Of a stretch of DNA of 64,000 nt, positions 3,943-20,718 are shown one piece after another. The DNA is taken from the IMG/VR virus record IMGVR_UViG_3300032322_001765, positions 1 to 64,000 of that record; one strand, written 5' to 3'. A model generated the notes under the pieces. The model was not told the DNA's origin, searched no databases, and saw nothing but the letters and a program-made list of their open reading frames with translations. A program made the position numbers and the translations under genes. Each line of letters starts with the position of its first letter. The stretch's first letter is position 1.

Positions 3943-4175
3943 TATCGTTTAGTAGTAGTGTAATGAGTACCTTTAGGACCTTTGCTGATAAAAGTTCTTC
4001 CATATAACTCAGCTTGGTACTCATCACTTTTAACATTATATTTTAAAACAAGTTTAATTTTTCGCTCTAAACTAATGCTAAGTAGAACTTCCGGTTTAAA
4101 TTCTAAAATTTCTGCCATAACGGTTTCACCGTTGTCTACGCATGTTACTTTGGCAGTGTCTTCATACCGTATCAT
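3942..4175 (-). CDS. Hypothetical protein
   Basis: 1-nt stop/start overlaps on both sides. Confidence 0.75.
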   Translation of the reverse strand: MIRYEDTAKVTCVDNGETVMAEILEFKPEVLLSISLERKIKLVLKYNVKSDEYQAELYGRTFISKGPKGTHYTTTKR

Positions 4176-4627
4176 TATAGTTCAGCCTTTTCACCAATTT
4201 TGGTAAATAGAGTATCAATCTTTTTTTCTCTTGTCCAACTATTTAGATATCGATTATCTACATTACAAATGTCAATCGCCTCATCCTCTGTAACCACACG
4301 ATGACTGACAATAATTTCATCCAAATGTTCTTGGCTAAACTCTTTTGCTTCTTTACATACAACAGTATCCAGTGCATATTCTTTTTTGCCTTTGGGTACT
4401 TGAACCATATAACGCATTCTAAACATACTTACGGCTTCAACTAAAACCCATTCAGTTTCGTCTGATGGTTCTATCTTAGAAAGACTGTAAGTCCCATCAT
4501 CGTTCTTTTTCCAATCTAAGGTATCACCTTCTTTCCAACCCAACTCTGCTAACATTTCTTCAGGTAGTGGAATGATAGGATCGCCATTTTCATCTTCTTC
4601 AACAGTAGCAATAAATTTTTTCATCAT
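4175..4627 (-). CDS. AbrB/MazE-like swapped-hairpin domain fused to an acidic C-terminal domain
   Basis: IIPLPEEMLAELGWKEGDTLDW matches the AbrB/MazE/SpoVT signature. Confidence 0.65.
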   Translation of the reverse strand: MMKKFIATVEEDENGDPIIPLPEEMLAELGWKEGDTLDWKKNDDGTYSLSKIEPSDETEWVLVEAVSMFRMRYMVQVPKGKKEYALDTVVCKEAKEFSQEHLDEIIVSHRVVTEDEAIDICNVDNRYLNSWTREKKIDTLFTKIGEKAEL

Positions 4628-6848: not shown

Positions 6849-7278
6849 TTTTTAAAAACTGTAGTGCTTTTGACAACACTTCTTGTTGTTTGCTGTACGC
6901 ATCATATTCCCATGGCAAATTGATGTACTCGTCATATGGCATAGATTCTGATAAGTTTTTAGTAATTAAAACCCCATGCCAATAAAACTCACCTTTTCTA
7001 GTTATTTTCAAAACTTTGGTAAATTTTTGATGGACATGAATTAGTTCGTGGACAAGAATCAATGGCACTGACTCAATAGGTAAATCATGATTTATGCCAA
7101 TTCGATTCATATGAATCATATCAATGCCACCGTATACAGACTTGCCTAAATCGTATATACAAACTTCTATAATAGGCGGCAGTTCAATGATATTTGATAC
7201 TGCAAGTGCTATTTTATCAACGATATTTTCATATCGCCAATTGTAGTTATTATTTTGATAAAAATATTTTACGTTCAC
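6838..7278 (-). CDS. Zincin-like metallopeptidase
   Basis: HELIH (HExxH) and downstream PWEYDA. GTGA overlap with the upstream gene. Confidence 0.7.
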   Translation of the reverse strand: MNVKYFYQNNNYNWRYENIVDKIALAVSNIIELPPIIEVCIYDLGKSVYGGIDMIHMNRIGINHDLPIESVPLILVHELIHVHQKFTKVLKITRKGEFYWHGVLITKNLSESMPYDEYINLPWEYDAYSKQQEVLSKALQFLKIDK

Positions 7279-8084
7279 ACGTGTTGAATAGTTGAAAAAC
7301 TTTTATCTAATATTTTTTGTCTTTCTTGTTTTGTTCTTGCGCCCAAAACAATAATGTTGTACAACTGGTTATTTGAAACAACTAACATAGTAATACAAAA
7401 TCCTGCTGCTCTCGTAAAACCAGTCTTAATTGTTATTACACCATTTTGACCAAAATAGTTACTTGTTGCTTTACTAGTCAACACGAAATTTTTTGGTTCA
7501 CGATTTTGTTTTCTTTTCTTTTTCACCTTTTTAATTTTTTTGGTAATGACGCCTTCGGGTGTAGTTATAACCTTTTGTGATTGTGCAGCACTTTTTACAA
7601 TGTCAAAAGTACTCACCGCATTTGTAAGTAAAATTAAATCGTTTACAGAACTATGATTCATTGGGCTTAGACCAGTTGGTTCTACAAATCCTGAATTATG
7701 CATCCCAAGGGTTCGTGCATAATCATTCATTTTGTTTATGAAAGAGGGTTGACCACCAGGGTAATGTTGAGACAAAGTAATTGCTGCTACATTGTCACTA
7801 CTAATAAGAGCCATGTTAACTAACTCTTTTCTAGTTAGAATCATACCTTTCTGTAATTTAGTATTAGGTGTTCTACTTGAGGTTACCTTTAATTTTTCAG
7901 TAAGGTCTTGTTTTTCTTTTAATACAGTATACACAGTTAACAACTTGCTAATGCTAGCAATACTAACCTGTTCTGAATTAAGTGATCCTTGAATGACTTC
8001 ACCGTTACTAACATTGTAAACAACACTAGTAGGTGCGGCAAAGCAAAAGCAAGGAACTAATAAAAGTAAAAATAATTTTCGCAT
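7275..8084 (-). CDS. D-alanyl-D-alanine carboxy/endopeptidase (peptidase S11, PBP5/PBP7-like), secreted
   Basis: SISK (SxxK), SDN (SxN) and KTG motifs are all intact. The signal peptide MRKLFLLLLVPCFCFA implies a start at 8084. Confidence 0.85.
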   Translation of the reverse strand: MRKLFLLLLVPCFCFAAPTSVVYNVSNGEVIQGSLNSEQVSIASISKLLTVYTVLKEKQDLTEKLKVTSSRTPNTKLQKGMILTRKELVNMALISSDNVAAITLSQHYPGGQPSFINKMNDYARTLGMHNSGFVEPTGLSPMNHSSVNDLILLTNAVSTFDIVKSAAQSQKVITTPEGVITKKIKKVKKKRKQNREPKNFVLTSKATSNYFGQNGVITIKTGFTRAAGFCITMLVVSNNQLYNIIVLGARTKQERQKILDKSFSTIQHV

Positions 8085-8164
8085 ATAATATTTATTATAC
8101 ATTACAACAGTAGAAATATGAAGCTATAAAGGTAAGGTAAAAGGTGATAAGTAGCCACTCTTTT

Positions 8165-8172
8165 TATAAATA
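8165..8172 (+). promoter_or_regulatory. T4-type late promoter box
   Basis: TATAAATA, 5 nt before ATG 8178. Confidence 0.7.
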
Positions 8173-8177
8173 TCGAG

Positions 8178-9305
8178 ATGACACTGGAAGAACTGGATGC
8201 TACAGCCAAACAAGCTTACTACAGTATGGATTTACCCACTGCTTTGCGCTGCTATGCTGAAGCATTTGTAAGATATCCTAAGTTGGCACTTGCCTACAAC
8301 AACTATGGAAATATTTTAAGAGAAACGGGTTATCCTGAAGAAGCATATGGGTTTTTGGAGACAGCCATGAAGCTTGACCCAACTGATAGAAATTTCCCAT
8401 TTAATTATGCTGTTGCTCATTTAGCAGCAGGAGATTTAGAAAAAGGGTGGGAACTTTTTGAGGCTCGATGGAGATTTAAACATCACGAACACACTTTAGA
8501 AGGATGGACTAAACCTAGATGGAATGGAGAATCGATAGCAGGCAAACGGTTACTTATCACCTGTGAAGAAGGTGACGGTGACAATATTCAATTTATAAGA
8601 TTTGTTGATCAACTAAGTGAACTTGATATTGAACCAATCATACAAACAGAAGTGCAATTAGAAAAATTATTTAAAAATAGTTTTCCTAAATTTACAGTAA
8701 TTAATAATACTCAAGAATTTGATGACTTTGATTATTGGACTCCTATTTTAAGTATTCCCAAATGTCTAAACATAACGTATGCTAATTTACCAAAAAGTAA
8801 AAAATATTTACAAGCATCAAACAAAAGTTTACAAAAATGGAAAAAAGTTATAGGCAAAAAAACTAAACCAATTATTGGATTATGTTGGAGCGGCACAAGC
8901 AAACGTTATCCGTTAGCTGAACTAATTAAATTATTGCCGGCTACAAAAGAATATGATTATGTTAATTTACAAATAAAATACACGGATGAAGAAAAAAGTA
9001 TTTTAGAAATTAATAATGTAAAGTGTTTTAAAGAAAATGTTAAGGATTGGGAAGATACGGCTGCATTAATTGATTACTGTGATATGGTTATAAGCATAGA
9101 CACAGGAATAGTACACTTAGCAGGATCGTTAAACAAACAAACAGTTTTGTTGTTAGACAAATACAAATCGTGTTGGCGTTGGTTATATGATAGTGAAAAG
9201 ACTTTATGGTATGATAGTTTAACCTTAATTAGACAAAGAGAACAGAATAATTATGATGAACAACTTTTTAGAGTATGGGAAACTATTAAACGTAACGGTC
9301 TGTAA
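8178..9305 (+). CDS. TPR-repeat glycosyltransferase (GT9/heptosyltransferase-like C-terminus)
   Basis: N-terminal TPRs (AYNNYGNIL, FNYAVAHL), W-x-G-E-x-x-x-GK...EEGDGDNIQF, and ISIDTGIVHLAG...CWRW. Confidence 0.8.
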   Translation: MTLEELDATAKQAYYSMDLPTALRCYAEAFVRYPKLALAYNNYGNILRETGYPEEAYGFLETAMKLDPTDRNFPFNYAVAHLAAGDLEKGWELFEARWRFKHHEHTLEGWTKPRWNGESIAGKRLLITCEEGDGDNIQFIRFVDQLSELDIEPIIQTEVQLEKLFKNSFPKFTVINNTQEFDDFDYWTPILSIPKCLNITYANLPKSKKYLQASNKSLQKWKKVIGKKTKPIIGLCWSGTSKRYPLAELIKLLPATKEYDYVNLQIKYTDEEKSILEINNVKCFKENVKDWEDTAALIDYCDMVISIDTGIVHLAGSLNKQTVLLLDKYKSCWRWLYDSEKTLWYDSLTLIRQREQNNYDEQLFRVWETIKRNGL

Positions 9306-9570
9306 ATATTCCTCGTACTGTGCTTCTTGCTAGTAATCTTTGTTCTTTAATAGATTCATAAAATTCATAATTTCTTATGAACTCTGTATCTTTTTCGTAA
9401 TTATAATTTCTTAATAACCTGTGATATTCTTGCAAAGTTAATAGTTTACTTAGTTCTTCCCAATTAACTTCTCTATTTTTTTCCGCATGCCATCTTTGAA
9501 CTTGGTCATTTCTTATTGACCATTGTGATACTTCATTTAGTAGTGTGGATGATATTCTAGGAATAGTCAT
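9286..9570 (-). CDS. Hypothetical protein
   Basis: Last gene of the long minus-strand run. Overlaps the convergent gene by 20 nt. Confidence 0.6.
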   Translation of the reverse strand: MTIPRISSTLLNEVSQWSIRNDQVQRWHAEKNREVNWEELSKLLTLQEYHRLLRNYNYEKDTEFIRNYEFYESIKEQRLLARSTVRGIFTDRYV

Positions 9571-9576
9571 TTGACA

Positions 9577-9711
9577 TTAATCGAACAAATCATCTTTTTT
9601 GTCAGGTTGAACCCATTCATTATATAATATAAAAAATGCTATACTAATTGCACCCATTAATAGGACACCAACTAAAAATCCGATTATAAAATACAATTGT
9701 TCAACACCCAT
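9577..9711 (-). CDS. 44-aa single-pass membrane protein (not in ORF track)
   Basis: MGVEQLYFIIGFLVGVLLMGAISIAFFILYNEWVQPDKKDDLFD. An ATAAATA box (9724-9718) lies 6 nt upstream. Confidence 0.65.
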   Translation of the reverse strand: MGVEQLYFIIGFLVGVLLMGAISIAFFILYNEWVQPDKKDDLFD

Positions 9712-9720
9712 AATAAGTAT

Positions 9721-12102
9721 TTATGACTGTAAATTATTGGTATTAGTGTAATGATTATAGAGCCATTCCCAATCGTAACTTAATTTTAATTTATCAAATT
9801 CACCATTAACTGTTTCATAGTAATCTACCGCATCTTTTGCACCTTTTAAAGACCACTGACTAAATTGCCCATCAGCTACACTTAACCAAACATCTAATCT
9901 ATATCTACTTTGTTCATCAATTACATTTAAAGAATTATATTTTAACTTGATGACTTCTCTAAACGCAGTTCGCCAAGTATCCCATTCGCTAGTATTATAA
10001 ATACCTATTCCAGAATTTATATTGACTAAAGTATGAGGGCTATCTAATGTAAAATCTAGTCCTTTGCCAGTAGTTGATAGGGTAAGATTTTTGTTATTTA
10101 AAACAACAGCCATATGTCCATATTCTAACCCATTTAAAATATTTGTGGCAGTGAAGATATAATGTTTTGAAGTATGAGTTCGTTTTGGTTGATAACTAAA
10201 ATCAAAATTAGGACTGACCTTACACTTGCTGTTTATTAAAAAGTACCAAGGAGTTAAAGCAGCGTTTGCTGCTGCATGTTGACTCGCAACTCTTCCTTTA
10301 ACGTTACTAACTTTTATTACTCTATTCGGCAAATGTTTAGTTACTTCTAATAAATGTTCGTAGCGGTCATTTTCACCTTGTTCTCCGTTACTTAAAAATA
10401 TAATATCTAATGGTTCATGACGATACCCTAAATTATGATATTTGACATATGGATAATCTTCTAATTTATCGTACATCTTTACTTTTGCATTCTTAGGAAT
10501 CAAAGCTGCAACATCATCTACAATATGAACGTGTGGTATTGAGTCATCTGAAATTATATTAGAGAAATTAAGATTAATATTGCCTATATAGGTATATGTG
10601 GTTTCTTCTTTGTATTCATTTATTCTATCAAAAATACTATCAATATACTCTACTTCGTTTATTTTTAAATCACATTTAATCTCATTTATAAATTTATTAC
10701 TTTGTGCATTTTTTGATTTATAAATTACTGTTGGCATATTTTCGCTAGAATGATACTGGTTACCAAACACGTAATTATATTTTTCTTCTGTATCATCTGG
10801 ATGCCAACTAAAATCAAAACTATCAATGTTAATTGGTTCAACAACTCTAAAATTACGTATATTTGGTAATTTGATTACTCGTTGATCCGAACAATATTTT
10901 TTTATAGCTACACTAGATTCAACATATATAGGACCGCCGGTTTTTTGCCATTGAGTTCCAAATTCATAATTCATCAACGGATCATGTGGATTAGGCACCC
11001 AGCCGTAATCGAACATTCTGTCATCAATATCATTAGGTATTTTCCAGTTTTCTTTATTTGGTAATAAAACTGCTTTTATATCTTTGATATATTTTTTATC
11101 AGTCGCATCTTTAACTCTATATTGGTAGGTTGGCATAGTTTCACCATCATACCATTGATTACCAAAAACATAGATGTAGGGAGGGTCGTGCGGGTTCGGC
11201 ACCCAACTTTGATCTATTACTGCATTATTAACTAATGGGCGCCAGCATCTACTATCAACATCAGGTAACAAAGTTGCTAACAAATCATGTACATATTTCT
11301 TTTCAATAGCTCCTTTTACCTTATACTGATAAGTAGGCATTGTTTTACTATCATACCATTGATTACCAAAAACATAAATGTACGGCGGCTCCGTTTCGTC
11401 TGGGTGCCATGAAAAATCAATTGTGCTGTTGCTAACTAAAGGTCTCCAACATCTATCATTACTGTCAGGTAATTTTTTTACTTTTTGAAAGTCAACATAC
11501 TTAACACCATGTGCATTTTCATTTATGTACGTAGGTCCTCCTGTCTTCTGCCATTGAGTTCCGAACTGCCAATTTAAGGGAGGTTCGTATGGATTAGGGC
11601 ACCAACTATAATCAAAGTTACTATCATCAATATTATCAGGAATTTGCCACTTATCTTTGTTTGATAATAAAGTAGCTTTTACATTGTATACATATTTCTT
11701 ATCTGTTGCACCTTTAACTCTATATTGGTATGTGGGCATTGTTTCACTATCATGCCATTGATTACCAAATACATAGATAAAGGGAGGGTCAGTATCGTCA
11801 GGATGCCAACTGTAATCAATAGTTGCATTGGCAATGAGAGGTCTCCAACATCGATTATTAGAATCAGGCAATCTTATTGCGTGTTGAAGATTTTGATATT
11901 TTATTCCTTCATGCTGCGGCACGATGAATTTAGGTCCGCCTGTCTTCTGCCACTGAGTTCCAAATTGATGTATGTAGGGTCTTTCGTAGATATAAGGGCG
12001 CCAATTAAAATCAAAGTTACTTGTATCTAATCCTTCTGGTATCTCCCAATAACCTTGTTCATTTAATTTTTTTCTGCGTTCTAGTTCTTCTTCACTATAC
12101 AT
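9721..12102 (-). CDS. Tandem-repeat protein with C-terminal GT-A-like domain
   Basis: Seven ~66-aa W/P-rich repeats (FD[FY]SWxP...FG[NT]QW), then a domain paralogous to 19771-20718. Confidence 0.75.
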   Translation of the reverse strand: MYSEEELERRKKLNEQGYWEIPEGLDTSNFDFNWRPYIYERPYIHQFGTQWQKTGGPKFIVPQHEGIKYQNLQHAIRLPDSNNRCWRPLIANATIDYSWHPDDTDPPFIYVFGNQWHDSETMPTYQYRVKGATDKKYVYNVKATLLSNKDKWQIPDNIDDSNFDYSWCPNPYEPPLNWQFGTQWQKTGGPTYINENAHGVKYVDFQKVKKLPDSNDRCWRPLVSNSTIDFSWHPDETEPPYIYVFGNQWYDSKTMPTYQYKVKGAIEKKYVHDLLATLLPDVDSRCWRPLVNNAVIDQSWVPNPHDPPYIYVFGNQWYDGETMPTYQYRVKDATDKKYIKDIKAVLLPNKENWKIPNDIDDRMFDYGWVPNPHDPLMNYEFGTQWQKTGGPIYVESSVAIKKYCSDQRVIKLPNIRNFRVVEPINIDSFDFSWHPDDTEEKYNYVFGNQYHSSENMPTVIYKSKNAQSNKFINEIKCDLKINEVEYIDSIFDRINEYKEETTYTYIGNINLNFSNIISDDSIPHVHIVDDVAALIPKNAKVKMYDKLEDYPYVKYHNLGYRHEPLDIIFLSNGEQGENDRYEHLLEVTKHLPNRVIKVSNVKGRVASQHAAANAALTPWYFLINSKCKVSPNFDFSYQPKRTHTSKHYIFTATNILNGLEYGHMAVVLNNKNLTLSTTGKGLDFTLDSPHTLVNINSGIGIYNTSEWDTWRTAFREVIKLKYNSLNVIDEQSRYRLDVWLSVADGQFSQWSLKGAKDAVDYYETVNGEFDKLKLSYDWEWLYNHYTNTNNLQS

Positions 12103-13586
12103 TAGCTACACACTTTTACACCATACAACGTTTCAAATCTATCTGCGTCACTTCTATCATTGACCATAGGTTCGCCTCGTATGTTTAATGATGTATTTAA
12201 GAGCATAGGACAACCAGTCATAATATACCATTTTTCTAGCAATTCTCTGATTCCCGAACCATCTTTTTTAACTGTCTGTACTCGACTGGTGCCGTCAACA
12301 TGGCATATAGCAGGAAAAGAATCAGGAAACTTACAATTAGCGATTGATTGCATATAAGGGCTATGATCCCACCCATTACAGAAATCAAAATACTGGTCAG
12401 CCATTTCATAAAGTATGACAGGGGCGAAGGGTCTAAATTGTTGTCTACGCTTAATTTCATTCACTTTGCCTTTTATATCAATTTGTCTAGGATCAGCCAG
12501 TAAACTTCTATTGCCCAATGCTCTAGGACCAAACTCTGCTTTTCCTGATGCAACACCAACTATTTTATTTTTAAGTAATTCATCTAATATATTATTAACA
12601 GGATACTTACCTTTTATATCATATCCTAAATATGCAGTGTTCCAATTAATAGCCATCCCATATGCAAGCGCAGCAGCACCTAAACTACTACCTGCATCAC
12701 CTGGATTAGGCATTATCCAAATATTATCAAAGTAATGTCCTAAATTTCTATTTGCTAAACAATTTAAGGCAACGCCGCCCATATAAACTAAATTACTACT
12801 AAAATTAAAATCCTTTGCTCTACGCATCACATTATAGATTAAATTTTCTGCTAAGTCTTGCGCACCTCTTGCAATTATAAATTCATCCATTGTGTCAAAC
12901 TCTTTATCATTTAATCCTAAATGTAAATTTTCTTTAAACTGAATTTCCCACTCATCGTTAATAAAATAATCTTTAAGTTGGTTTTTAAAAAGTTCACTAC
13001 TTACGCCATACGCACTCATACCCATTAAAATATATTCTTCTTCCATAGGTTCTAATCCGGCTTTTTGTGTCATTGCACTATAAAATAAACCTATACTATT
13101 TGGATAACCTTGACGCCATAACAACTTATATTTTGCAGCTCCCATATGGTTATACTCAGCAGCCCATATACTTATAGTGTCAAACTCTCCGATAGCGTCT
13201 ATTACAACTACAGTAGCTCTTTGAAAGGGGCTAGTTTGAAATCCGGCTGCGGCGTGACTTAAATGATGGTTATACGAAACAATTTTTTGATTAGATTTAA
13301 GTAATGGTTTAATTTGATCATTTAATACTTGTTTAGTTGTCAATTTATTAATTTGTAAACCTTCACCAGAATACAAACGTCTTAATTGTTTTTTAAAAGG
13401 ATTCTCATAATAAGCAATCGTGCTGATATTATAGTTTTGTACTTCTTGAATTAAATTTTCACAAATATTTTTATCATTTTTTATTTTACTATAACGCTCA
13501 CTATGCCCAGCAAAAACTATGCCACCTGTATTATTAATGACTGTTAATGCTGCATCATGAAAACCTGCACTAATACCAAGTATCAT
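12102..13586 (-). CDS. O-carbamoyltransferase, NodU/CmcH/TobZ family
   Basis: HDAA...ERYSK, HHLSH, GGVALNC, GDAG, EFGPRALGNRSLLADP, FRPFAP, HVDGTSRVQTV and LNTSLN are all present. Confidence 0.95.
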   Translation of the reverse strand: MILGISAGFHDAALTVINNTGGIVFAGHSERYSKIKNDKNICENLIQEVQNYNISTIAYYENPFKKQLRRLYSGEGLQINKLTTKQVLNDQIKPLLKSNQKIVSYNHHLSHAAAGFQTSPFQRATVVVIDAIGEFDTISIWAAEYNHMGAAKYKLLWRQGYPNSIGLFYSAMTQKAGLEPMEEEYILMGMSAYGVSSELFKNQLKDYFINDEWEIQFKENLHLGLNDKEFDTMDEFIIARGAQDLAENLIYNVMRRAKDFNFSSNLVYMGGVALNCLANRNLGHYFDNIWIMPNPGDAGSSLGAAALAYGMAINWNTAYLGYDIKGKYPVNNILDELLKNKIVGVASGKAEFGPRALGNRSLLADPRQIDIKGKVNEIKRRQQFRPFAPVILYEMADQYFDFCNGWDHSPYMQSIANCKFPDSFPAICHVDGTSRVQTVKKDGSGIRELLEKWYIMTGCPMLLNTSLNIRGEPMVNDRSDADRFETLYGVKVCS

Positions 13587-13687
13587 TTGTATATGAAGGG
13601 ATCTCTTTTTCGTAATTCTTTGAGTTTTTTTCGATATTTATATTCACGAATTACAAAATAGTACAATTCAATAATTTTTTTAATCAT
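13583..13687 (-). CDS. 34-aa basic peptide preceding the carbamoyltransferase (not in ORF track)
   Basis: MIKKIIELYYFVIREYKYRKKLKELRKRDPFIYK. ATGA overlap with 13586 and start overlapping the upstream stop. Confidence 0.75.
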   Translation of the reverse strand: MIKKIIELYYFVIREYKYRKKLKELRKRDPFIYK

Positions 13688-14540
13688 TTTTTATCCAATT
13701 AATCACCGTCTCCGCTACTTGCTTATTAAAATAAATACCCGGATGCGATCCATTGCCTTTTTTATCTTTTTGATTAAGTATATTTAGATCAATATCTCTA
13801 GCAGAATATTTGTTTATAAAATCCATGTCAAAAACTTTGGTTTTTACTATTGGTATTTGAAACTGTTCTAACGGTATATGTGTAATTTTTTTATGGTCTT
13901 TTAAAAATTGATCTAAATTACTTTGGTAAGTCGTAAATTCAAAAATTTTAATATTTAAAGACTTGCAAAGCAAGGAAATTGTCTTTCTATAAAAAGCAAA
14001 CCTATTATTAATATGTGAATTTTCTAGAAGAAAGCAGGTATATGCAGGTTTCCAAAATGGCGCCATAGGATTATTAACCAAATAAAACTCTAGTTTATCA
14101 TTAGTCCAGTAACAATTTCTTGTTAATTCAGGCCAATTTATAATAATTGCTTTAGGCCTACATTCATCATTTGATAGCATTTCTATAATATTTAAAAAAC
14201 TAAAATCAACTGATGCCCCACCTATTGCCCCGTTTACATAATCTAATCTCAAAGCTTTGCTAGTAATATAAGAAAATGTTTCTTCTAATGGTAATCCTGT
14301 GCCAGTTGTAAAACTGCAACCAAAAAATGCTATATAATTAGATAAATTTACTTCATCTAATTCTTTTTCCATTCTATATCCATAAGAATTAAACTTGTAT
14401 AGAATTTTACGATTAGACCATATCCATTTATCACCAAATTTTTCTTTATTTTTTACAAATTTTTCTTCCGGATCACCGGGATAAAATTCAGCAGATAAAT
14501 TTAATTCATTTTCATACGGAGATTTCAGTAAATAAGTCAT
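13680..14540 (-). CDS. SGNH/GDSL-like hydrolase or acyltransferase
   Basis: FFGCSFTTG (block I-like), GGASVD, RD...SHPG (block V-like). Likely start is ATG 14540. Confidence 0.6.
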   Translation of the reverse strand: MTYLLKSPYENELNLSAEFYPGDPEEKFVKNKEKFGDKWIWSNRKILYKFNSYGYRMEKELDEVNLSNYIAFFGCSFTTGTGLPLEETFSYITSKALRLDYVNGAIGGASVDFSFLNIIEMLSNDECRPKAIIINWPELTRNCYWTNDKLEFYLVNNPMAPFWKPAYTCFLLENSHINNRFAFYRKTISLLCKSLNIKIFEFTTYQSNLDQFLKDHKKITHIPLEQFQIPIVKTKVFDMDFINKYSARDIDLNILNQKDKKGNGSHPGIYFNKQVAETVINWIKND

Positions 14541-15684
14541 GTAATATTTTATAAAATTCAGAAAAAGTATTTTGATAGGTTTCGTTTCTTGATTCATCTA
14601 ACCATTTATTATATTTAATTCCTTGTTTAAACATTTCAACATTTTCATCTTTAGACACATGACTCAATAAATGCTGATAATTTTTAAGTTTATCAGTTAA
14701 TTTGTATTTTAGGGTTTCGGGTAAAATTCTTACGCTATAAAATTTTGGGTCATAAACAATATTTGATTGAACCTTAATATTTAAATTATTAAAATATTCC
14801 ATAAACTCAGGAACATAATAAATGTTCATCCAACTTATAGTCTGTGTTACACTTGTGTTTATCCAACTATTTTCTTTAAGTTTTTGTAAATTATATTCTA
14901 CATCATCCCATTTAGTTCCTTTTCTGATATAGTCGTTACGCTTACCTAAATCGTCAATACTACAATGTACTTCTACTTCTTTAAAGTTTTTCCAAATGTC
15001 TAATAATTGATTTGGTAGGTTAGACATATTAATACTATACCATAATTTTATTTGTTTGTTTAATCCATGTTCGATAAGTCTTTCTAAATAATTCCAATGT
15101 TTCTCTACTAAAGTAGGTTCACCCCCGTTTATATAAATTAACTCAACATCTTGACTGTGTGATAACAAGTCATTCCAAAATTCATCTGATTGTGTCCAAT
15201 TTGAATTAATCTTATTATCGTAAATTGTAACAAAATTTAATTCAGATTGAAGTTTATTGTACTCACTTATCCATTGAGTACTTGATGCCGGATTACATGT
15301 TCTACATTTTGCATTGCATAAGTTCCCTAACCTTAATTCAATAAACTTAAAATTAGGTTTTATAATTCCGTTTATATCATCATAGTCAGTGCCATATCGA
15401 GAAAGTTCTAATTTTCTTTTACTTTGTAAATTTAAATCTTCTTCTTGGTAACATCTTAAACATGCTTGTGGTTTTATTCCATTGCGCATTTCGTTACGTG
15501 TCTGTACAAAAAAATCGCTATTAACTATTTCTATAACCTTATTTTGATTTAAATTTAATTTTTTTCCGTTGGTTCTAGCAAAACTCATACTGTTAGTATG
15601 ATCACTAATGCAACATAATGAACTAGTTCCTTCAGGATGTGTTGCTAAATGCATCCATGGCAATGGACAAAAAGTGTCGGTCAT
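14512..15684 (-). CDS. Radical SAM protein with N-terminal Twitch-type domain
   Basis: CNAKCRTC (CxxxCxxC), INGGEP, and N-terminal C..W...LCC...CLRC. Confidence 0.9.
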   Translation of the reverse strand: MTDTFCPLPWMHLATHPEGTSSLCCISDHTNSMSFARTNGKKLNLNQNKVIEIVNSDFFVQTRNEMRNGIKPQACLRCYQEEDLNLQSKRKLELSRYGTDYDDINGIIKPNFKFIELRLGNLCNAKCRTCNPASSTQWISEYNKLQSELNFVTIYDNKINSNWTQSDEFWNDLLSHSQDVELIYINGGEPTLVEKHWNYLERLIEHGLNKQIKLWYSINMSNLPNQLLDIWKNFKEVEVHCSIDDLGKRNDYIRKGTKWDDVEYNLQKLKENSWINTSVTQTISWMNIYYVPEFMEYFNNLNIKVQSNIVYDPKFYSVRILPETLKYKLTDKLKNYQHLLSHVSKDENVEMFKQGIKYNKWLDESRNETYQNTFSEFYKILHDLFTEISV

Positions 15685-16988
15685 ATATTTTTATACCAAA
15701 TTAAAATATCTTTGTTTCTTGATAATATTGAAAGTAACATATCATTTTCGTTTCTGTGTAAGTCGATTTTGTTAAACCTACGCTTTCCAGCTTTTAAACC
15801 ATTTACATGGTCGCTATACTTTTCGTCAAATGTTTGCCGATACTTCATATCATTAAATGTTTCACTATAAACCTTTGTTAAATGGTTACCTTTTATATTT
15901 TCGTATTCTATAAGGTCATCTAACATCGGGTCTAAAATTCTATGGGGCACACACATGGGACTCATTAATACACTTGATTCAAAATCGAAAGTTATTTTTA
16001 CATAAGATTTTACATTAAGTTGAACCGCTAAATCAATCATGTTTTTCATATCTAGCATTCCAGGGAGGGTCAATGTCACATCTAACACCATTGCATCCAT
16101 ACCATATATGTCATTTAAAAATAATCCCTTTTTAAAATTAGTTAACCATTCATTATATTTTAGACCAGATCGAATATACTCCGCAACTTCACCCGTAGCA
16201 TCCATACTAGCACATATATTAACTTTTTTGAAATTAGGAAGTAAATCATATAGGTTTTGATTTTTGTATGATACACGACTTAGATTAGTATTATATCTAA
16301 CAACAACGTTTTTACTATGTCCTGATTCAACCAAATATTTCATAACTTCCCAATGTATATCATACATTAGTGGCTCTCCACCGACCCAATAAATTTCTTC
16401 AATAGTATTATTTTTTACAGCTTCCCATAGTTCACTTTCAACGACTGTAGTTTGAAAATTTTCAATTTGATTTTTATTTTCATGTACCATCCATCTGTCG
16501 ACCGACGGGTTCCACATGTTTAAAATTCTTTTTTCACTTTCCCAAGAACTTGACAATTGCTCCCCACACATTCTGCATTTAAAATTACAAAGGTTATGTA
16601 TTCTATAATCAAACGAAATTGGTTTCATTGTGGTATGACCAGTTTCATCTGTTGAACTTAATATTTCATCAATTTTATGTGGGAATAAATTTTCGGTAAA
16701 ATACTGTCGATAGGTATATAAATTCAATATATTATTATTACAGACTTGACATTCAGGAATGTTTTCTCCATTAAGTATTCTACGACGAACACTACGCATA
16801 TGTTCGCTATTCCAATGTTCTTCCAGTGTCGTTGGTTTATACTCGTTACTATCAGAACCTTCGCTATCAATATATTGTTTTTGCCAACTAGCCTGTTCAC
16901 GACTAGCACAGCATAATCTACGTTCGCTTTGTGGGCTTATGTAAGTATGTGTCCATGGTGCAACACAAAATGTCTTTTTATCAATCAT
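15681..16988 (-). CDS. Radical SAM protein with N-terminal Twitch-type domain
   Basis: CNFKCRMC, VGGEP, and N-terminal CVAPW...LCC...CQVC. Confidence 0.9.
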   Translation of the reverse strand: MIDKKTFCVAPWTHTYISPQSERRLCCASREQASWQKQYIDSEGSDSNEYKPTTLEEHWNSEHMRSVRRRILNGENIPECQVCNNNILNLYTYRQYFTENLFPHKIDEILSSTDETGHTTMKPISFDYRIHNLCNFKCRMCGEQLSSSWESEKRILNMWNPSVDRWMVHENKNQIENFQTTVVESELWEAVKNNTIEEIYWVGGEPLMYDIHWEVMKYLVESGHSKNVVVRYNTNLSRVSYKNQNLYDLLPNFKKVNICASMDATGEVAEYIRSGLKYNEWLTNFKKGLFLNDIYGMDAMVLDVTLTLPGMLDMKNMIDLAVQLNVKSYVKITFDFESSVLMSPMCVPHRILDPMLDDLIEYENIKGNHLTKVYSETFNDMKYRQTFDEKYSDHVNGLKAGKRRFNKIDLHRNENDMLLSILSRNKDILIWYKNI

Positions 16989-18408
16989 ATGTTGCTAATG
17001 GCTCATCTATATTTGTACCATCACCGCTATTCAATGGTTGGTAGGGTAATACTGTGGTTTCAATTGATTCTATCCAATCTGTTAAAATTTTAGGAAACAC
17101 ACTTAACGATTTGTTTCTACGTTGGTCGTATTCGGCGTAGAATGTTTTAAAATCTTTCCATAATAACTCTTTATTACTTGTCCTACGATGTGGGGCGTCA
17201 ACAACTTCTAAATAGTCTATCAAACGCTCTATGCTAGCTTTTTCACTCTCATGCCACAGTGGTTTGTTTTTTGCATTTTCATACCAATTACTTAAATTAT
17301 TTCTAACGTAATCTTTAATGTGATCAGGTAATGCTAATGGACTTTGAAAGCTCGGAAAACGCAATAGATTTAAGCTAACCGTGGGGCTCTTACAGTTTGG
17401 ATCTTCTTTAAGTTCATATATCTCGTCCAAGAAGTGATGAATACTGAATAAACATAAACTGTTTATTGTCATCATAACGTGAAGGCCTTCGAGATTTGCC
17501 TCAGATGCAATACGTTTAAAATTTTTCTTCCATAGTTTATATTCTAATCCATCACGAATATATTCAGCATGTTTACCCGTAGCTTCGCATGAAGTATACA
17601 AATGAAACCTTTTTATATTTTTTGTTTTTAAAATTAATTTGTCAATGATATCCTCTTTTGCAATTAAATTACTATTAACCGCAAAGCGCATATTACTATC
17701 CTGTTTCTCGAACCAATCGAACAACTTCCAAGTATTACCGGACATGAGTGGTTCGCCACCTGTAATACGTAGTTCTTCTAAACTTTCATTAAGACCATTA
17801 TCCCACCATTCCCAAAATGCTTGCACATAAGGATTTTCACTATCATCTTTGTAAGGCTGTGCCCATGATCCGTCTTGTTGAAAGGCGCCGGCGCCATCGC
17901 TAACTAAGTTTTGATAAGGTCCTTTTTTCTTTATGTCATTCGCCCAAGTTGTACTAAAACTTGCATTGCAATAACTACAAGCCAAATTACACACTCTATC
18001 AAAACTAATTTCAAAGGTTTTCAATAATACATCATGATCCCAAGGAGTCTGATTTGTTTTTGATATATCTTCATCACTATAGATAATTGTTTTAAATGTT
18101 CTATCAGAAACTTGGTCACCACCTATATCTTCAATTTTCCAACAATATTCACACTCTCTAGGTCTTTCACCTTCGAGCATCATTTTACGCATTAATTTTT
18201 TATGGTTAGTATTGTGTATAGCCGAAACATTTACTTTAACTTCTTCTATAGGAATTCTGTGAGCCGGCGGGTGATGACAGCTTGCAGTTGTACCAGACCC
18301 CAACCAAGTAGTTGCATTGTACCATTTTGCTGCACAATAACTTGGACTAATTTTATTGATTACTCTATTTCTATAGTCTGTCAAACTCTCATCAGGTTTT
18401 TTAGGCAT
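16981..18408 (-). CDS. Radical SAM protein with N-terminal Twitch-type domain (SCHH subtype)
   Basis: CNLACSYC, TGGEP, and N-terminal CAAKW...SCHHP...CEYCW. Confidence 0.9.
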   Translation of the reverse strand: MPKKPDESLTDYRNRVINKISPSYCAAKWYNATTWLGSGTTASCHHPPAHRIPIEEVKVNVSAIHNTNHKKLMRKMMLEGERPRECEYCWKIEDIGGDQVSDRTFKTIIYSDEDISKTNQTPWDHDVLLKTFEISFDRVCNLACSYCNASFSTTWANDIKKKGPYQNLVSDGAGAFQQDGSWAQPYKDDSENPYVQAFWEWWDNGLNESLEELRITGGEPLMSGNTWKLFDWFEKQDSNMRFAVNSNLIAKEDIIDKLILKTKNIKRFHLYTSCEATGKHAEYIRDGLEYKLWKKNFKRIASEANLEGLHVMMTINSLCLFSIHHFLDEIYELKEDPNCKSPTVSLNLLRFPSFQSPLALPDHIKDYVRNNLSNWYENAKNKPLWHESEKASIERLIDYLEVVDAPHRRTSNKELLWKDFKTFYAEYDQRRNKSLSVFPKILTDWIESIETTVLPYQPLNSGDGTNIDEPLATYD

Positions 18409-19771
18409 TTAATTCTTTCCAAAAGTTTTCATATTGGGGAAACGTACTTATAAAGTCTGTACCTCTCCGTAAATCGTATTCATTTATAAACTTCACAAAA
18501 TCTTCTTGTAAATCTATTCTTGTTTCATTGTTTGTAAGGTAATCGCAAAATCTTTTGATTTGATCCCATTCCTCAAGATACAGTCTTGCGTGTTCAGCTT
18601 TGATATAGTATTTTAGTAATAATTCTGACTTTGCTAAAATATCTTTGGCAAAATGCTCTCTTACATCTTTCGGAAGAATAAGGACATTTAAATGGGGAGG
18701 CCAACGTAGATAATTTATACTTACAGGAACTCTATTATTTGCACTCGTTAAATTAAATTCTTTTCGTAATTCAATAACCAAATCTAAAAAATCAGTAGTA
18801 GTTGGTAAACTTAGCACATTCATTGTGGTCATAATACTCACTGTAGAATCTGTATTACTTAAAATTTTTCTAACGTTATCTATCCATTTGTTGTAATTTA
18901 ATCCATATCTGCTGTATTCTGCTTGTTCACCTATCGATTCCAAACTTGTATAAATATCCACTCGTTTAACAGAATTGGATAGTTTATTAATTGTTTCTAT
19001 AAAATTATCTATCAATTTATCGTCTACACATAAATTAGAATTAATTGCTAATTCTAAGTTTGGTTTGGGATTATCGATAAGGTACGATAAAGTTTTTTGT
19101 ACATCTTTACTTAACAGCGGTTCACCACCTGTAATTCTAAACACTCGTAAATCGTCAATAATAGTAGGAAAATATTTATGGAAAGTATTTACATATGGAT
19201 TATCGTCACTATGCTTGTAAGGAAAACGTCCTACTTGTTTTAACCAATCTAGATTATGATTACTATTAAATGTAGGATAGGGCCCATGTCTTTCAATTTC
19301 TTCCATCCACTTGCTCGACACCTCAGGACTGCAATAACTACATTTAAAATTACACACATTACTGAATGAAACTTCTAAATAAGCAGGATTTATATCAGCA
19401 TATGGATCGCTACGTGCGACTTCATCTATTCTGTCCCACGCCCAATAATCTGCTGTTTTATAATGTCTATCACTAAAGTAAGATTTATCCAAATCTTCTA
19501 CGTTCCAACAATAGTCGCATTCTTGAGGTCGTTCGCCTTTTAACATTTTAACACGTTGTTCTTTTTTATAAGAACTGTTATGCAAGCTTGCTGGATTTTG
19601 TAATTCGCTTAATTGAATTTTATGTGGGCTGGGATGATGACAACTATGGTTATAACCATTTTGTAAATTTAAAGTTGTTTGCAACCACTTGGCACTACAA
19701 AAACTAGAACTAATATTGTTAATTTTTATAACTTTTTGTTTTAATTCCTCAATTCTCTGTTCGTTGCTCAT
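18401..19771 (-). CDS. Radical SAM protein with N-terminal Twitch-type domain (SCHH subtype)
   Basis: CNFKCSYC, TGGEP, and N-terminal CSAKW...SCHHP...CDYCW. The TAATG overlap supports a start at 19771. Confidence 0.9.
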   Translation of the reverse strand: MSNEQRIEELKQKVIKINNISSSFCSAKWLQTTLNLQNGYNHSCHHPSPHKIQLSELQNPASLHNSSYKKEQRVKMLKGERPQECDYCWNVEDLDKSYFSDRHYKTADYWAWDRIDEVARSDPYADINPAYLEVSFSNVCNFKCSYCSPEVSSKWMEEIERHGPYPTFNSNHNLDWLKQVGRFPYKHSDDNPYVNTFHKYFPTIIDDLRVFRITGGEPLLSKDVQKTLSYLIDNPKPNLELAINSNLCVDDKLIDNFIETINKLSNSVKRVDIYTSLESIGEQAEYSRYGLNYNKWIDNVRKILSNTDSTVSIMTTMNVLSLPTTTDFLDLVIELRKEFNLTSANNRVPVSINYLRWPPHLNVLILPKDVREHFAKDILAKSELLLKYYIKAEHARLYLEEWDQIKRFCDYLTNNETRIDLQEDFVKFINEYDLRRGTDFISTFPQYENFWKELNA

Positions 19772-20718
19772 TACCACCCTTCTATTTTTCTGATTACATC
19801 TATCTCTTTTACTAATGGTCCTAAATTATGTCTATCACTTTTATAATGCCTTTTAAAAAATTTACTTTGTTCAGAACTTAACATACATATTGGTAATCCT
19901 AATTTAGTATCAAGTAAATTTCCTATTCTGTCAATTTCATCTAATAAATTAACTTTTTCATGTTCTTCCCAAAGCTTTTCAAAATTATCAAACCATTGTA
20001 CTTCATTTGAATTCCAATCAGTGAGCATAGTCATGTACGTTCCTAATCTTGCACCATAAATACCCCATAAACCATTCTCAACGTCTGCACCTACATTATG
20101 CCAAATAGTTAAGTTATCAAGGTTTCTACTTACTACGCTTCGTTGAAAATCGTTTATGTTTGGTTTTGTTCCATTAATTAAACACATTTTCACTCCTTCT
20201 CTGAAACCTGCACGCCAAGCCTGAAATGGTCTGTAGTTAGGATAAGTAGTGCTATAACAATCGTTCATGCTCCAGTATAACCCATTTGTATAATCTAAAC
20301 AAAAATCTACTGTAGTGATATTATTGCCGTCACTTGCCTCATGAGTTTTCATATTTTCTACATAGGTTTTAGTCCAACTACTTATACCGCCGTTTCCATA
20401 TTGTAAGCCATTGATTATATTTTTTGCTTTCCAACGATACTGTGCTTTTTGATAACTTTCATCTTTGTCTGTAAAATCTAGTGTTAAATTAAAAAACTCA
20501 AAATTAGGTAAATTATCTCCGTCAATTAATATAAAACGTTCAGTATCACTTTCTTCTGCTGCGGCTTTATGTGCTGCGTCACTTCCTTTAACACCGTCTA
20601 CTCTACGTGCCCATGGTACCATGTTTTTAATTTTAACCCAAAATTCTTCTTTTTGTGGCTCATCATAACTTAAATAAATGCAATCTAAGTCTGCTATATC
20701 AACTTTATCATAACTCAT
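19771..20718 (-). CDS. GT-A-like glycosyltransferase
   Basis: YLSYDEP...VDGVKG..AAH..AA...FILIDGDN (DxD motif), NGLQYGNGG, WRAGFREGVK. Confidence 0.6.
   Translation of the reverse strand: MSYDKVDIADLDCIYLSYDEPQKEEFWVKIKNMVPWARRVDGVKGSDAAHKAAAEESDTERFILIDGDNLPNFEFFNLTLDFTDKDESYQKAQYRWKAKNIINGLQYGNGGISSWTKTYVENMKTHEASDGNNITTVDFCLDYTNGLYWSMNDCYSTTYPNYRPFQAWRAGFREGVKMCLINGTKPNINDFQRSVVSRNLDNLTIWHNVGADVENGLWGIYGARLGTYMTMLTDWNSNEVQWFDNFEKLWEEHEKVNLLDEIDRIGNLLDTKLGLPICMLSSEQSKFFKRHYKSDRHNLGPLVKEIDVIRKIEGW

What the first reader, a model, noticed from the sequence alone, without database searches (positions are those of the whole stretch)
10670..12050. Seven ~66-aa Trp/Pro repeats of two types (B-A-B-A-A-B-A) fused to a glycosyltransferase-like domain
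Type A reads WRPL...ID.SWHPD...PYIYVFGNQW....MPTYQY, and type B reads W.IP..ID...FD..W.P......FGTQWQKTGGP. Both share an FD.SW.P...FG.QW core. Aromatic-rich arrays like this could bind glycan or set chain length as a ruler, or scaffold the cluster's enzymes.
Basis: partly seen in the sequence, partly recalled or inferred. Interest (0 to 1): 0.6.

Follow-up and report, generated by a model that had tools for sequence, protein, structure and literature searches.

The report
Phage glycosyltransferase-like protein with repeat arm
An uncultured freshwater giant phage encodes a protein in which seven copies of an undescribed 66-residue beta module precede a sugar-transferase-like domain lacking the usual metal-binding motif; it belongs to a very large, wholly uncharacterised phage family whose module count runs from 3 to about 31.

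Summary
ORF 9721-12102 (minus strand, 793 aa) carries seven tandem 65-68-aa repeats in the order B-A-B-A-A-B-A (window 10666-12060).

- **C-terminal domain.** It models with high confidence as a GT-A glycosyltransferase fold.
- **DxD site.** The DxD metal site reads N-S-K here. In 295 distinct family domains it is N/F/P-x-K and never Asp; the Lys is invariant.
- **Paralogues.** Two paralogues in the same phage keep DxD. One lies in the same gene string.
- **Repeats.** They match no Pfam, PHROG, NCBIfam or PDB entry. Their only similarities are to the stretch just after the DxD position of their own GT domain (hhalign E 7e-6; shuffles at best 0.04) and weak structural matches, almost all to GT-A enzymes. 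They may therefore be amplified copies of part of the catalytic domain.
- **Family.** At least 3,335 relatives, all named "hypothetical" where a source names them, and found only on phage-like contigs. Arrays hold 3-31 modules and were always seen fused to this domain.
- **Context.** A carbamoyltransferase or a twitch radical-SAM gene lies directly upstream in 43 of 52 loci, at the edge of the baseplate/fibre module.

Best reading (about 0.35): a phage glycan-tailoring transferase that works without a metal, with a rigid, multivalent acceptor-binding arm. Activity and acceptor are untested.

The parts
9721..12102 (-). Whole gene (793 aa, P0001): repeat array plus GT-A-like domain. Its start overlaps the stop of the upstream carbamoyltransferase gene by one base.
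12061..12102 (-). N-terminal 14 aa, predicted as a short helix. R10, L13, G17, Y18 and W19 are conserved in relatives.
11863..12060 (-). Repeat 1, type B (aa 15-80)
11668..11865 (-). Repeat 2, type A (aa 80-145)
11464..11661 (-). Repeat 3, type B (aa 148-213)
11269..11466 (-). Repeat 4, type A (aa 213-278)
11065..11262 (-). Repeat 5, type A (aa 281-346)
10861..11058 (-). Repeat 6, type B (aa 349-414)
10666..10863 (-). Repeat 7, a diverged type A next to the GT domain (aa 414-479)
10423..10665 (-). About 80-aa alpha/beta linker subdomain (aa 480-560). It is absent from the DxD paralogues and no fold match covers it.
9994..10422 (-). GT-A-fold core (aa 561-703)
10225..10233 (-). N624-S625-K626, at the position where paralogues have DxD (DGD or DAD). 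Family-wide this is N/F/P-x-K with the Lys invariant.
10186..10206 (-). FDFSYQP motif (aa 633-639) inside the GT domain, the centre of the stretch that resembles the repeats' FDxSWxP motif
9724..9993 (-). C-terminal helical bundle (aa 704-793) with the W-R-x-x-F-R-E-x-x-K motif shared with the DxD paralogues
12102..13586 (-). NodU/CmcH-type carbamoyltransferase, directly upstream. This position is conserved in 33 of 52 related loci.
13680..14597 (-). 305-aa ORF of unknown family. It recurs between the rSAM and carbamoyltransferase genes in relatives.
14512..19777 (-). Four tandem twitch-domain radical SAM genes (NF033640, 301-343 bits against a cut-off of 170)
19771..20718 (-). Standalone 315-aa paralogue of the GT-A-like domain with an intact DGD motif ('o315')

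Best explanation
P0001 is a soluble, acidic protein of an uncultured freshwater jumbo myophage distantly related to T4. From the N terminus it has a short helix, seven rigidly stacked ~66-aa all-beta modules, an ~80-aa linker subdomain, a GT-A-fold domain and a helical bundle.

The GT domain belongs to a GT-A-like family so far seen only on phage or phage-like contigs. Other members, including one in the same gene string, keep the DxD metal site. In P0001's subfamily that site is N/F/P-x-K with an invariant Lys.

I take it to be the last enzyme of a phage glycan-building and tailoring gene string. That string holds a DxD transferase, four twitch radical-SAM enzymes, an unknown 305-aa protein and an O-carbamoyltransferase. 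In this reading the protein transfers a sugar without a metal, the Lys taking the cation's place at the donor phosphates. The module array appears to have been amplified from the part of the GT domain just after the DxD strand. It would act as a length-tunable, multivalent arm that holds a repetitive acceptor, which could be a polysaccharide of the host envelope or a repetitive virion (fibre) protein.

Shown: the anatomy, the fold, the loss of DxD, the variation in module number, the synteny and the restriction to phage contigs. Inferred: catalytic activity, the role of the Lys, the acceptor and the function of the array.
For: - **Fold.** The AF2 model of aa 480-793 has pLDDT 92.3. VIA-align matches are GT-A transferases or nucleotidyltransferases of the same fold class: Z 9.7 for B4GALNT1, 9.3 for CHSY3-CHPF, 9.2 for WrtF, about 139 residues at about 3 A. 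Foldseek's best match is SunS, E 5.7e-4, probability 0.99.
- **Family link.** hhalign to the DxD-bearing o315 family gives 98.4% probability, E 9e-15 over 193 columns. BLASTP to the tandem paralogue gives 7e-19, and that paralogue has sub-threshold GT2 Pfam hits on its DxD region.
- **Retained residues.** About 25 residues invariant across both subfamilies are kept, including two Asp (the VDF..D segment in o315) and the WR..FRE..K motif. This argues for a working pocket.
- **DxD site.** The triplet is N-x-K in 196, F-x-K in 98 and P-x-K in 1 of 295 distinct domains.
- **Context.** A carbamoyltransferase lies immediately upstream in 33 of 52 loci and an rSAM gene in 10 of 52. The same GT family sits beside rSAM genes at a second locus of this phage and in Ralstonia phage RsoM2USA.
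- **Array shape.** pLDDT 92.8 and pTM 0.66. The overall shape is reproduced in independent models of relatives: TM 0.55-0.56 over 389-409 residues in the Atlas, and 0.51 in BFVD.
- **Array variation.** 3-31 modules, never seen without the GT domain.
- **Origin of the repeats.** hhalign of the type A profile against the GT domain gives E 6.7e-6 over 24 columns. The best of 30 column shuffles is 0.039 and the reversed alignment gives 0.7. By my reading of the entry titles, about 15 of the 17 PDB chains with Z >= 2 are GT-A or related nucleotidyltransferase enzymes, including the same top chains as for the catalytic domain.
Against: - No activity, donor or acceptor is known for any member. All named relatives are 'hypothetical'.
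- Loss of DxD is also what a dead pseudo-enzyme looks like.
- GT-A Z-scores of 8-10 are only modestly above the tool's stated background of 7-8.
- The repeat-to-GT similarity spans only 19-24 columns. It is absent against the o315 paralogues, and the structural matches are weak (Z at most 3.5 with a 480-residue query).
- A rod of up to 31 modules is unusual for a cytoplasmic enzyme, and the gene lies beside baseplate and fibre genes, which fits a virion protein equally well.
- Start/stop overlap with the neighbouring gene is common in phages and proves no functional link.
Confidence: 0.35

Rival explanations
1. Non-catalytic pseudo-glycosyltransferase. The DxD-less domain and the GT-derived modules only bind the acceptor (or the nucleotide sugar) and present it to the canonical DxD transferase o315 encoded nearby. 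On my own knowledge of those systems (not tested here), this is how inactive GT-like partners such as GtfB or CHPF are thought to work.
For: DxD is lost in all 295 domains. A DxD paralogue lies in the same gene string, and in several relatives a second copy lies directly downstream of the repeat-GT gene. CHSY3-CHPF, a complex of GT-like chains, is among the best structural matches.
Against: The invariant Lys and the retained family-wide Asp, Arg and Glu residues are more conservation than a pure scaffold needs. An o315-like gene was found within the fetched flank in only 15 of 41 loci.
Confidence: 0.2
2. Virion fibre or decoration protein. The module array is a structural rod, and the degenerate GT-A domain at its tip has been re-used as a glycan- or ligand-binding head. 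The vaccinia H3 envelope protein is a precedent for a GT-A fold used for binding.
For: The gene lies at the end of the baseplate/fibre module. That module includes a baseplate wedge subunit, a virion structural/tail-fibre-like protein and a 5,694-aa protein. The rod is rigid with a copy number of 3-31. DxD is lost. Vaccinia H3 is among the weak structural matches. A hypervariable host-recognition cluster that mixes fibres, glycosyltransferases and rSAM cassettes has been described in related aquatic myophages (PMC7029224).
Against: There is no PHROG or Pfam structural-protein match. The C-terminal head is the most conserved part, the opposite of typical receptor-binding tips. The directly adjacent genes are enzymes in 43 of 52 loci. 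There is no trimerisation or anchor domain.
Confidence: 0.2
3. Scaffold that assembles the cluster's enzymes (rSAMs, carbamoyltransferase) into a complex, one docking site per module.
For: The carbamoyltransferase or an rSAM gene is persistently adjacent. The number of rSAM genes next door varies from none to four.
Against: Module number (3-31) shows no obvious relation to the number of neighbouring enzyme genes. The complex prediction with the carbamoyltransferase gave no verdict, so it is not evidence either way.
Confidence: 0.08
4. DNA-modifying glycosyltransferase, as in T-even phages.
For: Phage GTs often glucosylate DNA. This is general knowledge; nothing specific was found here.
Against: The array and the whole protein are acidic (pI 5.7-5.8; each module carries a net charge of -1 to -3). 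No nucleic-acid-binding domain was found. The gene lies in the structural region, not among replication or nucleotide-metabolism genes.
Confidence: 0.03

Closest known systems
GT2-type GT-A glycosyltransferases (SunS/ThuS, ArnC/GtrB, SpsA, TarS/TarP, B4GALNT1, chondroitin polymerases)
   Same: The same Rossmann-like GT-A core (Z 8-9.7 over about 139 residues; Foldseek probability up to 0.99). There is an S-x-x-E segment after strand 1, and helices follow the core as in SunS, HAS and BcsA (218-223 residues aligned).
   Different: No DxD: it reads N-S-K, with the Lys invariant across the family. No Pfam or NCBIfam GT model matches. No membrane segment. An N-terminal array of modules is absent from all of these.
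Metal-independent GT-A enzymes (GT14 C2GnT-L, GT42 Cst-II). Named from my own knowledge, not tested here.
   Same: GT-A fold without DxD. In C2GnT-L, basic side chains take the role of the metal.
   Different: No detectable sequence relation. The basic residue here sits exactly at the third DxD position. Activity is unproven.
DxD-bearing paralogues in the same phage lineage: o315 (window 19771-20718), the 533-aa tandem protein at G000:C1:178631-180232, and Ralstonia phage RsoM2USA gp348
   Same: Homologous GT-A-like domain (hhalign E 9e-15; BLASTP 7e-19; tblastn 1e-11). They share invariant residues and the helical bundle. They are likewise adjacent to radical SAM genes.
   Different: They keep DGD or DAD, lack the repeat array and the 80-aa linker, and show no similarity to the repeats.
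Aromatic-rich repeat arms on carbohydrate-active proteins (clostridial CROPs, choline-binding/CW_binding repeats, glucan-binding YG repeats, the TarS C-terminal tandem domains). Named from my own knowledge.
   Same: A tandem, aromatic-rich array of variable copy number attached to a GT-A domain. The array here is 16% W+Y+F and 8.6% Pro.
   Different: The unit is 66 aa, not 20-30 aa. It sits N-terminal to the GT domain. No Pfam match to any of these families. The fold resembles part of a GT-A domain rather than a beta-solenoid or a CBM.
Host recognition cluster of aquatic T4-like myophages (PMC7029224)
   Same: A hypervariable island beside the fibre genes that holds glycosyltransferases and radical-SAM cassettes.
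   Different: That paper does not describe this protein, its repeats or a DxD-less GT. The present phage is closer to PA5oct-like jumbo phages (49% identity in the SbcC-like protein).

Membership tests
GT-A fold nucleotide-sugar glycosyltransferases (GT2-like) | alpha/beta/alpha Rossmann-like GT-A core | tested here: met
   Model pLDDT 92.3. VIA-align Z 9.7, 9.3 and 9.2 with rmsd about 3 A over about 139 residues. The listed hits are GT-A transferases or nucleotidyltransferases of the same fold class. Foldseek best match is SunS at 5.7e-4.
GT-A fold nucleotide-sugar glycosyltransferases (GT2-like) | DxD (Asp-x-Asp) divalent-cation/diphosphate-binding motif at the end of strand 4 | tested here: not met
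   N624-S625-K626 aligns with DGD or DAD of the paralogues. Across 295 distinct family domains the triplet is N/F/P-x-K and never D.
GT-A fold nucleotide-sugar glycosyltransferases (GT2-like) | Match to a curated GT family model (Pfam PF00535/PF13641 or NCBIfam) above threshold | tested here: not met
   No hits for P0001. Only the DxD paralogue gives sub-threshold hits: PF13641 E 0.0017 and PF00535 E 0.016.
GT-A fold nucleotide-sugar glycosyltransferases (GT2-like) | Glycosyl transfer from an activated donor | not testable with these tools
   Needs biochemistry.
Known carbohydrate-binding or cell-wall-binding repeat families (CBMs, CW_binding_1, CROPs, SH3b, LysM and similar) | Sequence match to a family model | tested here: not met
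   No Pfam, NCBIfam, PHROG or PDB-sequence hit for the array.
Known carbohydrate-binding or cell-wall-binding repeat families (CBMs, CW_binding_1, CROPs, SH3b, LysM and similar) | Fold match to a known binding module | tested here: inconclusive
   Foldseek PDB gives nothing below E 1.6. VIA-align gives only 17 chains at Z >= 2, mostly GT-A enzymes.
Phage tail fibre or decoration proteins | Match to structural PHROGs or Pfam fibre/Ig-like domains | tested here: not met
   No PHROG or Pfam hit for P0001. In BFVD only two uncharacterised relatives match.
Phage tail fibre or decoration proteins | Presence in the virion | not testable with these tools
   No cultured relative carries the repeats: tblastn of 50,697 phage records found only a C-terminal-domain hit in RsoM2USA.
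Phage-restricted 'o315-type' GT-A-like family (unnamed) | Homology over the core plus helical bundle, with shared invariant residues (L-S..E, K-G, N..NG..YG, DF..D, WR..FRE..K) | tested here: met
   hmmsearch E 3e-16, hhalign 98.4% and E 9e-15, alignment A3.

The most novel reading that the evidence does not exclude
The 66-aa modules are a new domain class born by partial duplication of the acceptor-side half of a GT-A catalytic domain. They were then amplified into a rigid rod of 3 to about 31 units. The rod acts as a molecular ruler or processivity arm for a metal-independent transferase in which a Lys replaces DxD. Together with a DxD paralogue, twitch radical-SAM enzymes and a carbamoyltransferase, this enzyme would decorate the phage's giant fibre protein, or the host envelope, with an unusual carbamoylated glycan at defined spacing.
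Probability: 0.15. Interest if true: 0.75.

Novelty: new variant of a known kind. Interest (0 to 1): 0.55.

Why it matters
The family is large. The word-indexed search returned at least 3,335 clusters at 90% identity, and more than 8,000 for the DxD paralogue. It is widespread in lake and other aquatic phage contigs, and no member has a name or a function.

It offers three testable things:
- a GT-A domain in which an invariant Lys sits where the metal-binding DxD should be;
- a possible case of a new repeat domain made from a fragment of an enzyme's own catalytic domain;
- a recurring phage cassette (GT-A-like genes, twitch radical-SAM genes, carbamoyltransferase) beside the host-recognition genes.

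Its product could be a virion glycan or a modification of the host surface. Either would bear on phage host range, superinfection exclusion and the unexplained abundance of radical-SAM genes in aquatic T4-like phages.

Tried and rejected
- **Family and sequence searches with no hit.** Pfam, PHROGs, NCBIfam and PDB-sequence searches (single sequence and profile) of P0001 gave nothing usable.
- **Cultured phages.** tblastn against 50,697 phage records found no repeat match, only a C-terminal-domain hit in RsoM2USA.
- **Fold searches on the array.** Foldseek PDB was noise. The ESM Atlas by shape, and BFVD, returned only uncharacterised relatives. The Atlas feature search on two modules gave no usable hit, and the Atlas's own model is poor (pLDDT 0.47), so its structural rows were ignored.
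- **Complex prediction.** Carbamoyltransferase with P0001 aa 349-793: no verdict. It is evidence neither for nor against binding.
- **Promoter and terminator scan of 7000-21500.** No more sites than in shuffles, so nothing could be said about operon structure.
The contigs confirm the gene in four lake studies. The many joints inside the array come from short contigs at 90% likeness and were not accepted as evidence of copy-number polymorphism.
- **Length differences inside 90% clusters.** Most are N-terminally truncated gene calls at contig ends. One case (584 against 781 aa with both true ends) may be real or an assembly collapse.
- **Scan of 185,579 species genomes with the GT profile.** 11 loci, all on MAG contigs of unrelated taxa, which I take to be mis-binned phage contigs. 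It gave no informative bacterial context.
- **My early assumption of a marine cyanophage or pelagiphage was wrong.** The DNA is held by lake-water and freshwater runs, and its SbcC-like gene is closest to PA5oct-like jumbo phages.
- **Literature searches.** Searches for the motifs, for NF033640 and for the gene combination found no description of this protein.
- **DNA-binding role.** Judged unlikely because the protein is acidic.
- **The large representative search was not run.** Its best-150 list would be filled by close relatives.
Full report
**1. What is there**

The finding lies inside one ORF, window 9721-12102 on the minus strand, 793 aa (P0001). The motif FG[TN]Q[WY] occurs at aa 47, 112, 180, 245, 313, 381 and 446, spaced 65 or 68 residues apart. 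Modules with FGTQWQKTGGP (type B) are numbers 1, 3 and 6. Modules with FGNQW/Y followed by MPT (type A) are numbers 2, 4, 5 and 7.

HMMs built from several hundred modules of relatives delimit the array at aa 15-479, window 10666-12060, with per-module i-E-values of 1e-28 to 1e-37. The A and B profiles are clearly homologous (hhalign E 1e-23).

Inside this protein, A2/A4/A5 are 65-74% identical. A7, next to the C-terminal domain, is diverged (39-44%). B modules are 38-55% identical to each other, and A against B is 17-36%. DNA identity is at most 73%. These are old copies, not an assembly artefact.

The family-wide signature is W ... FDySW.P ... PP.i..FG.QW ... (MPT or GGP) ... KY. The array is acidic (pI 5.7), with 16% W+Y+F and 8.6% Pro. 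The protein has no hydrophobic segment.

**2. The C-terminal domain**

P0001 matches no Pfam, PHROG, NCBIfam or PDB sequence.

An AlphaFold2 model of aa 480-793, built on 32 aligned relatives, has mean pLDDT 92.3 and pTM 0.88. Model residues 82-224 (aa 561-703) are a GT-A fold. With VIA-align against 48,161 PDB representatives, the listed entries are GT-A glycosyltransferases or nucleotidyltransferases of the same fold class. The best are B4GALNT1 (Z 9.7, rmsd 3.1, 139 residues), CHSY3-CHPF (9.3) and WrtF (9.2). Hyaluronan and cellulose synthases align over 218-223 residues, including the helices that follow the core. Foldseek's best hit is the S-glycosyltransferase SunS (E 5.7e-4, probability 0.99). 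These Z-scores are only moderately above the tool's stated background, so the fold call rests on the uniformity of the list together with the sequence links in section 3. An ~80-aa subdomain (aa 480-560) precedes the core and has no match.

**3. Paralogues, and the missing DxD**

The window belongs to an IMG/VR virus record of 220,867 bp that CheckV rates 61% complete. Searching it with family HMMs found two more genes carrying this GT-like domain.
- One is a 533-aa protein at 178631-180232 with two tandem copies, carrying DGD and DAD.
- The other is a standalone 315-aa protein in the same gene string as P0001, window 19771-20718 ('o315'), carrying DGD.

The tandem paralogue gives sub-threshold GT2 Pfam hits on its DxD region. 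The profile-profile match between the P0001 domain and the o315 family is 98.4% probability, E 9e-15, over 193 columns.

In the alignment, P0001 has N624-S625-K626 where the paralogues have D-x-D. About 25 other residues that are invariant across both subfamilies are kept, including two Asp (the VDF..D segment in o315) and a WR..FRE..K motif.

Across 295 distinct domains of the repeat-bearing subfamily, the triplet is N-x-K (196), F-x-K (98) or P-x-K (1), and never Asp. The Lys is invariant.

So the domain is GT-A by fold and by descent but fails the DxD criterion. An invariant Lys in a pocket that is otherwise conserved suggests to me a metal-independent enzyme in which the Lys contacts the donor phosphates. 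Metal-independent GT-A enzymes are known from the literature as I recall it, but I did not test that here. A non-catalytic binding domain is the obvious alternative.

**4. The repeat modules**

A model of aa 1-480 built on 44 relatives has pLDDT 92.8 and pTM 0.66. Each module has a short strand, a long irregular loop carrying FDxSWxP, and then three strands.

The overall shape is reproduced in independent predicted models of relatives: TM 0.55-0.56 over 389-409 residues in the ESM Atlas, and 0.51 in BFVD. I therefore infer a fairly rigid rod rather than beads on a string.

Foldseek against the PDB found nothing. VIA-align found only 17 chains with Z >= 2, the top at 3.5. By my reading of the entry titles, about 15 of these are GT-A or related nucleotidyltransferase enzymes, each aligned to a single module. 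They include the same chains that lead or stand high in the list for the catalytic domain (9h6j_A, 6p61_A, 2c0n_A).

An independent sequence test points the same way. The type A profile aligns to the GT domain of the same family over 24 columns centred on FDFSYQP (aa 633-639), just after the DxD-equivalent strand. The hhalign probability is 85% and E is 6.7e-6. The type B profile gives E 1.8e-4. As controls, a reversed alignment gives E 0.7 and 30 column shuffles give at best 0.039. HMMER also reports the reciprocal weak hits. The order of secondary-structure elements around the motif is the same in the module and the domain.

The repeats show no similarity to the o315 paralogues. If they derive from a GT domain, it is from the fused lineage. 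A shared functional motif, or intragenic exchange, cannot be excluded. I put the 'amplified fragment of the catalytic domain' idea at roughly 0.4. I could not fold a single module or superpose coordinates.

**5. Distribution and variation**

The word-indexed search returned 3,335 relatives within the length window. Those that carry a source's name are all 'hypothetical protein'.

HMM architectures show 3 to 16 modules in that set. Among 65 distinct proteins from 80 IMG/VR loci, complete arrays hold 3 to 31 modules, median 8.5. Array patterns include (BA)n, An-BBB and (ABBB)n, which indicates duplication of higher-order units.

In the proteins, loci and genome examined here, every module-bearing ORF ended in the GT domain apart from apparent fragments at contig ends. 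Two subfamilies exist. The N-x-K subfamily has a median of 6 modules and usually ends B-A. The F-x-K subfamily has a median of 12 and ends B-B.

The ESM Atlas clusters are 100% viral. A scan of one genome per prokaryote species found the GT family only on 11 MAG contigs of unrelated taxa, which I take to be phage DNA binned with bacteria. BFVD holds two uncharacterised members from 'uncultured Caudovirales phage'. No cultured phage in the collection has the repeats. No paper in the library mentions the motifs.

**6. Genomic setting**

The window carries the following phage genes:
- a T4 baseplate protein;
- a gp5-like OB domain;
- a baseplate wedge subunit (PHROG E 1e-255);
- virion structural and tail-fibre-like proteins;
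- a 5,694-aa ORF;
- SbcCD-like genes.

The SbcC-like protein is closest (49%) to PA5oct-like Pseudomonas jumbo phages. The DNA is held by lake-water and freshwater runs from 17 studies, and contigs from four of them tile the gene.

Downstream of the giant ORF, on the minus strand, come several conserved small ORFs and then this string:
1. o315 (DxD GT-like);
2. four tandem twitch-domain radical SAM genes (NF033640, 301-343 bits);
3. a 305-aa unknown;
4. a NodU/CmcH-type carbamoyltransferase;
5. P0001, whose start overlaps the carbamoyltransferase stop by one base.

Relatives keep this layout with none to four rSAM genes. Among 52 loci with enough upstream sequence, the gene directly upstream is a carbamoyltransferase in 33 and an rSAM in 10.

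The same GT family also neighbours rSAM genes at the second locus of this phage and in Ralstonia phage RsoM2USA. The record holds 11 rSAM genes in all. rSAM-rich T4-like environmental genomes have been noted before without explanation (PMC5332604). So has a host recognition cluster that mixes fibres, glycosyltransferases and rSAM cassettes (PMC7029224).

**7. Interpretation**

Shown: the anatomy, the GT-A fold, homology to DxD-bearing phage paralogues, family-wide replacement of DxD by x-x-K, a high-confidence repeat fold with a reproducible overall shape, extreme copy-number variation, obligatory fusion to the GT domain, restriction to phage contigs, and conserved adjacency to carbamoyltransferase and rSAM genes at the edge of the fibre module.

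Inferred: that the protein is the last enzyme of a phage glycan-tailoring pathway, working without a metal, and that its array is a multivalent or spacing arm for a repetitive acceptor. I give this 0.35.

The main rivals are these:
- a non-catalytic pseudo-GT that presents the acceptor to o315 (0.2);
- a virion fibre or decoration protein with a re-used GT-like head (0.2);
- an enzyme scaffold (0.08). The only test, a complex prediction, gave no verdict;
- DNA glycosylation (0.03), disfavoured by the protein's acidity.

**8. Novelty and verdict**

The catalytic-type domain is a divergent, DxD-less member of the known GT-A fold class. The 66-aa module is not in any library searched. Its apparent derivation from the enzyme's own domain, and its 3-31-fold amplification, are undescribed as far as I could find. 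I rate this a new variant of a known kind, with moderate to good interest (0.55). Its interest is limited by the absence of any functional data.

Noticed in passing
window 26929-44013 (-): A single 5,694-aa ORF next to the baseplate genes, with only weak FG-GAP and E1_FCCH hits. Relatives carry 5,219-5,312-aa versions at the same place.
   Followed up: partly
window 14512-19777 (-); also G000:C1:153247-178635: Four tandem twitch-domain radical SAM paralogues (NF033640) lie in the window. The 221-kb record holds 11 rSAM genes in all, 7 above the family cut-off. Their function is unknown.
   Followed up: partly
window 19771-20718 (-): A 315-aa standalone GT-A-like protein with an intact DGD motif. 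None has a Pfam domain. It looks like a core gene of this phage group.
   Followed up: partly
G000:C1:178631-180232 (-) (locus L002 1477-3078): A 533-aa protein made of two tandem GT-A-like domains (DGD and DAD), directly beside a 337-aa radical SAM gene.
   Followed up: partly
window 7275-8102 (-) and 8178-9305 (+): The phage encodes an S11 D-Ala-D-Ala carboxypeptidase (E 1e-35), whose N terminus looks by eye like a signal peptide (not tested). It also encodes a TPR plus GT9 heptosyltransferase-like protein. Both suggest cell-envelope-directed functions.
   Followed up: no
window 13680-14597 (-): A 305-aa ORF with no family match recurs between the rSAM and carbamoyltransferase genes in many relatives.
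   Followed up: no
loci L019, L021, L022, L029, L030, L035-L037, L045, L054: In these relatives a second o315-like DxD gene lies immediately downstream of the repeat-GT gene.
   Followed up: no
window 4175-4627 (-): A 150-aa ORF with a weak MazE/AbrB-type antitoxin domain hit (E 1e-4, just below the Pfam cut-off).
   Followed up: no
window 59826-60647 (+): An NAD-dependent sugar epimerase/dehydratase (PF01370, E 3.5e-30) lies beyond the SbcCD-like genes. It is another sugar-nucleotide enzyme in this phage.
   Followed up: no
proteins P0250 versus P0051/P0246 (one 90%-identity cluster): 584 aa (4 modules) against 781 aa (7 modules), with identical true N and C termini. This is either a recent three-module change or a collapse in a short-read assembly.
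   Followed up: partly
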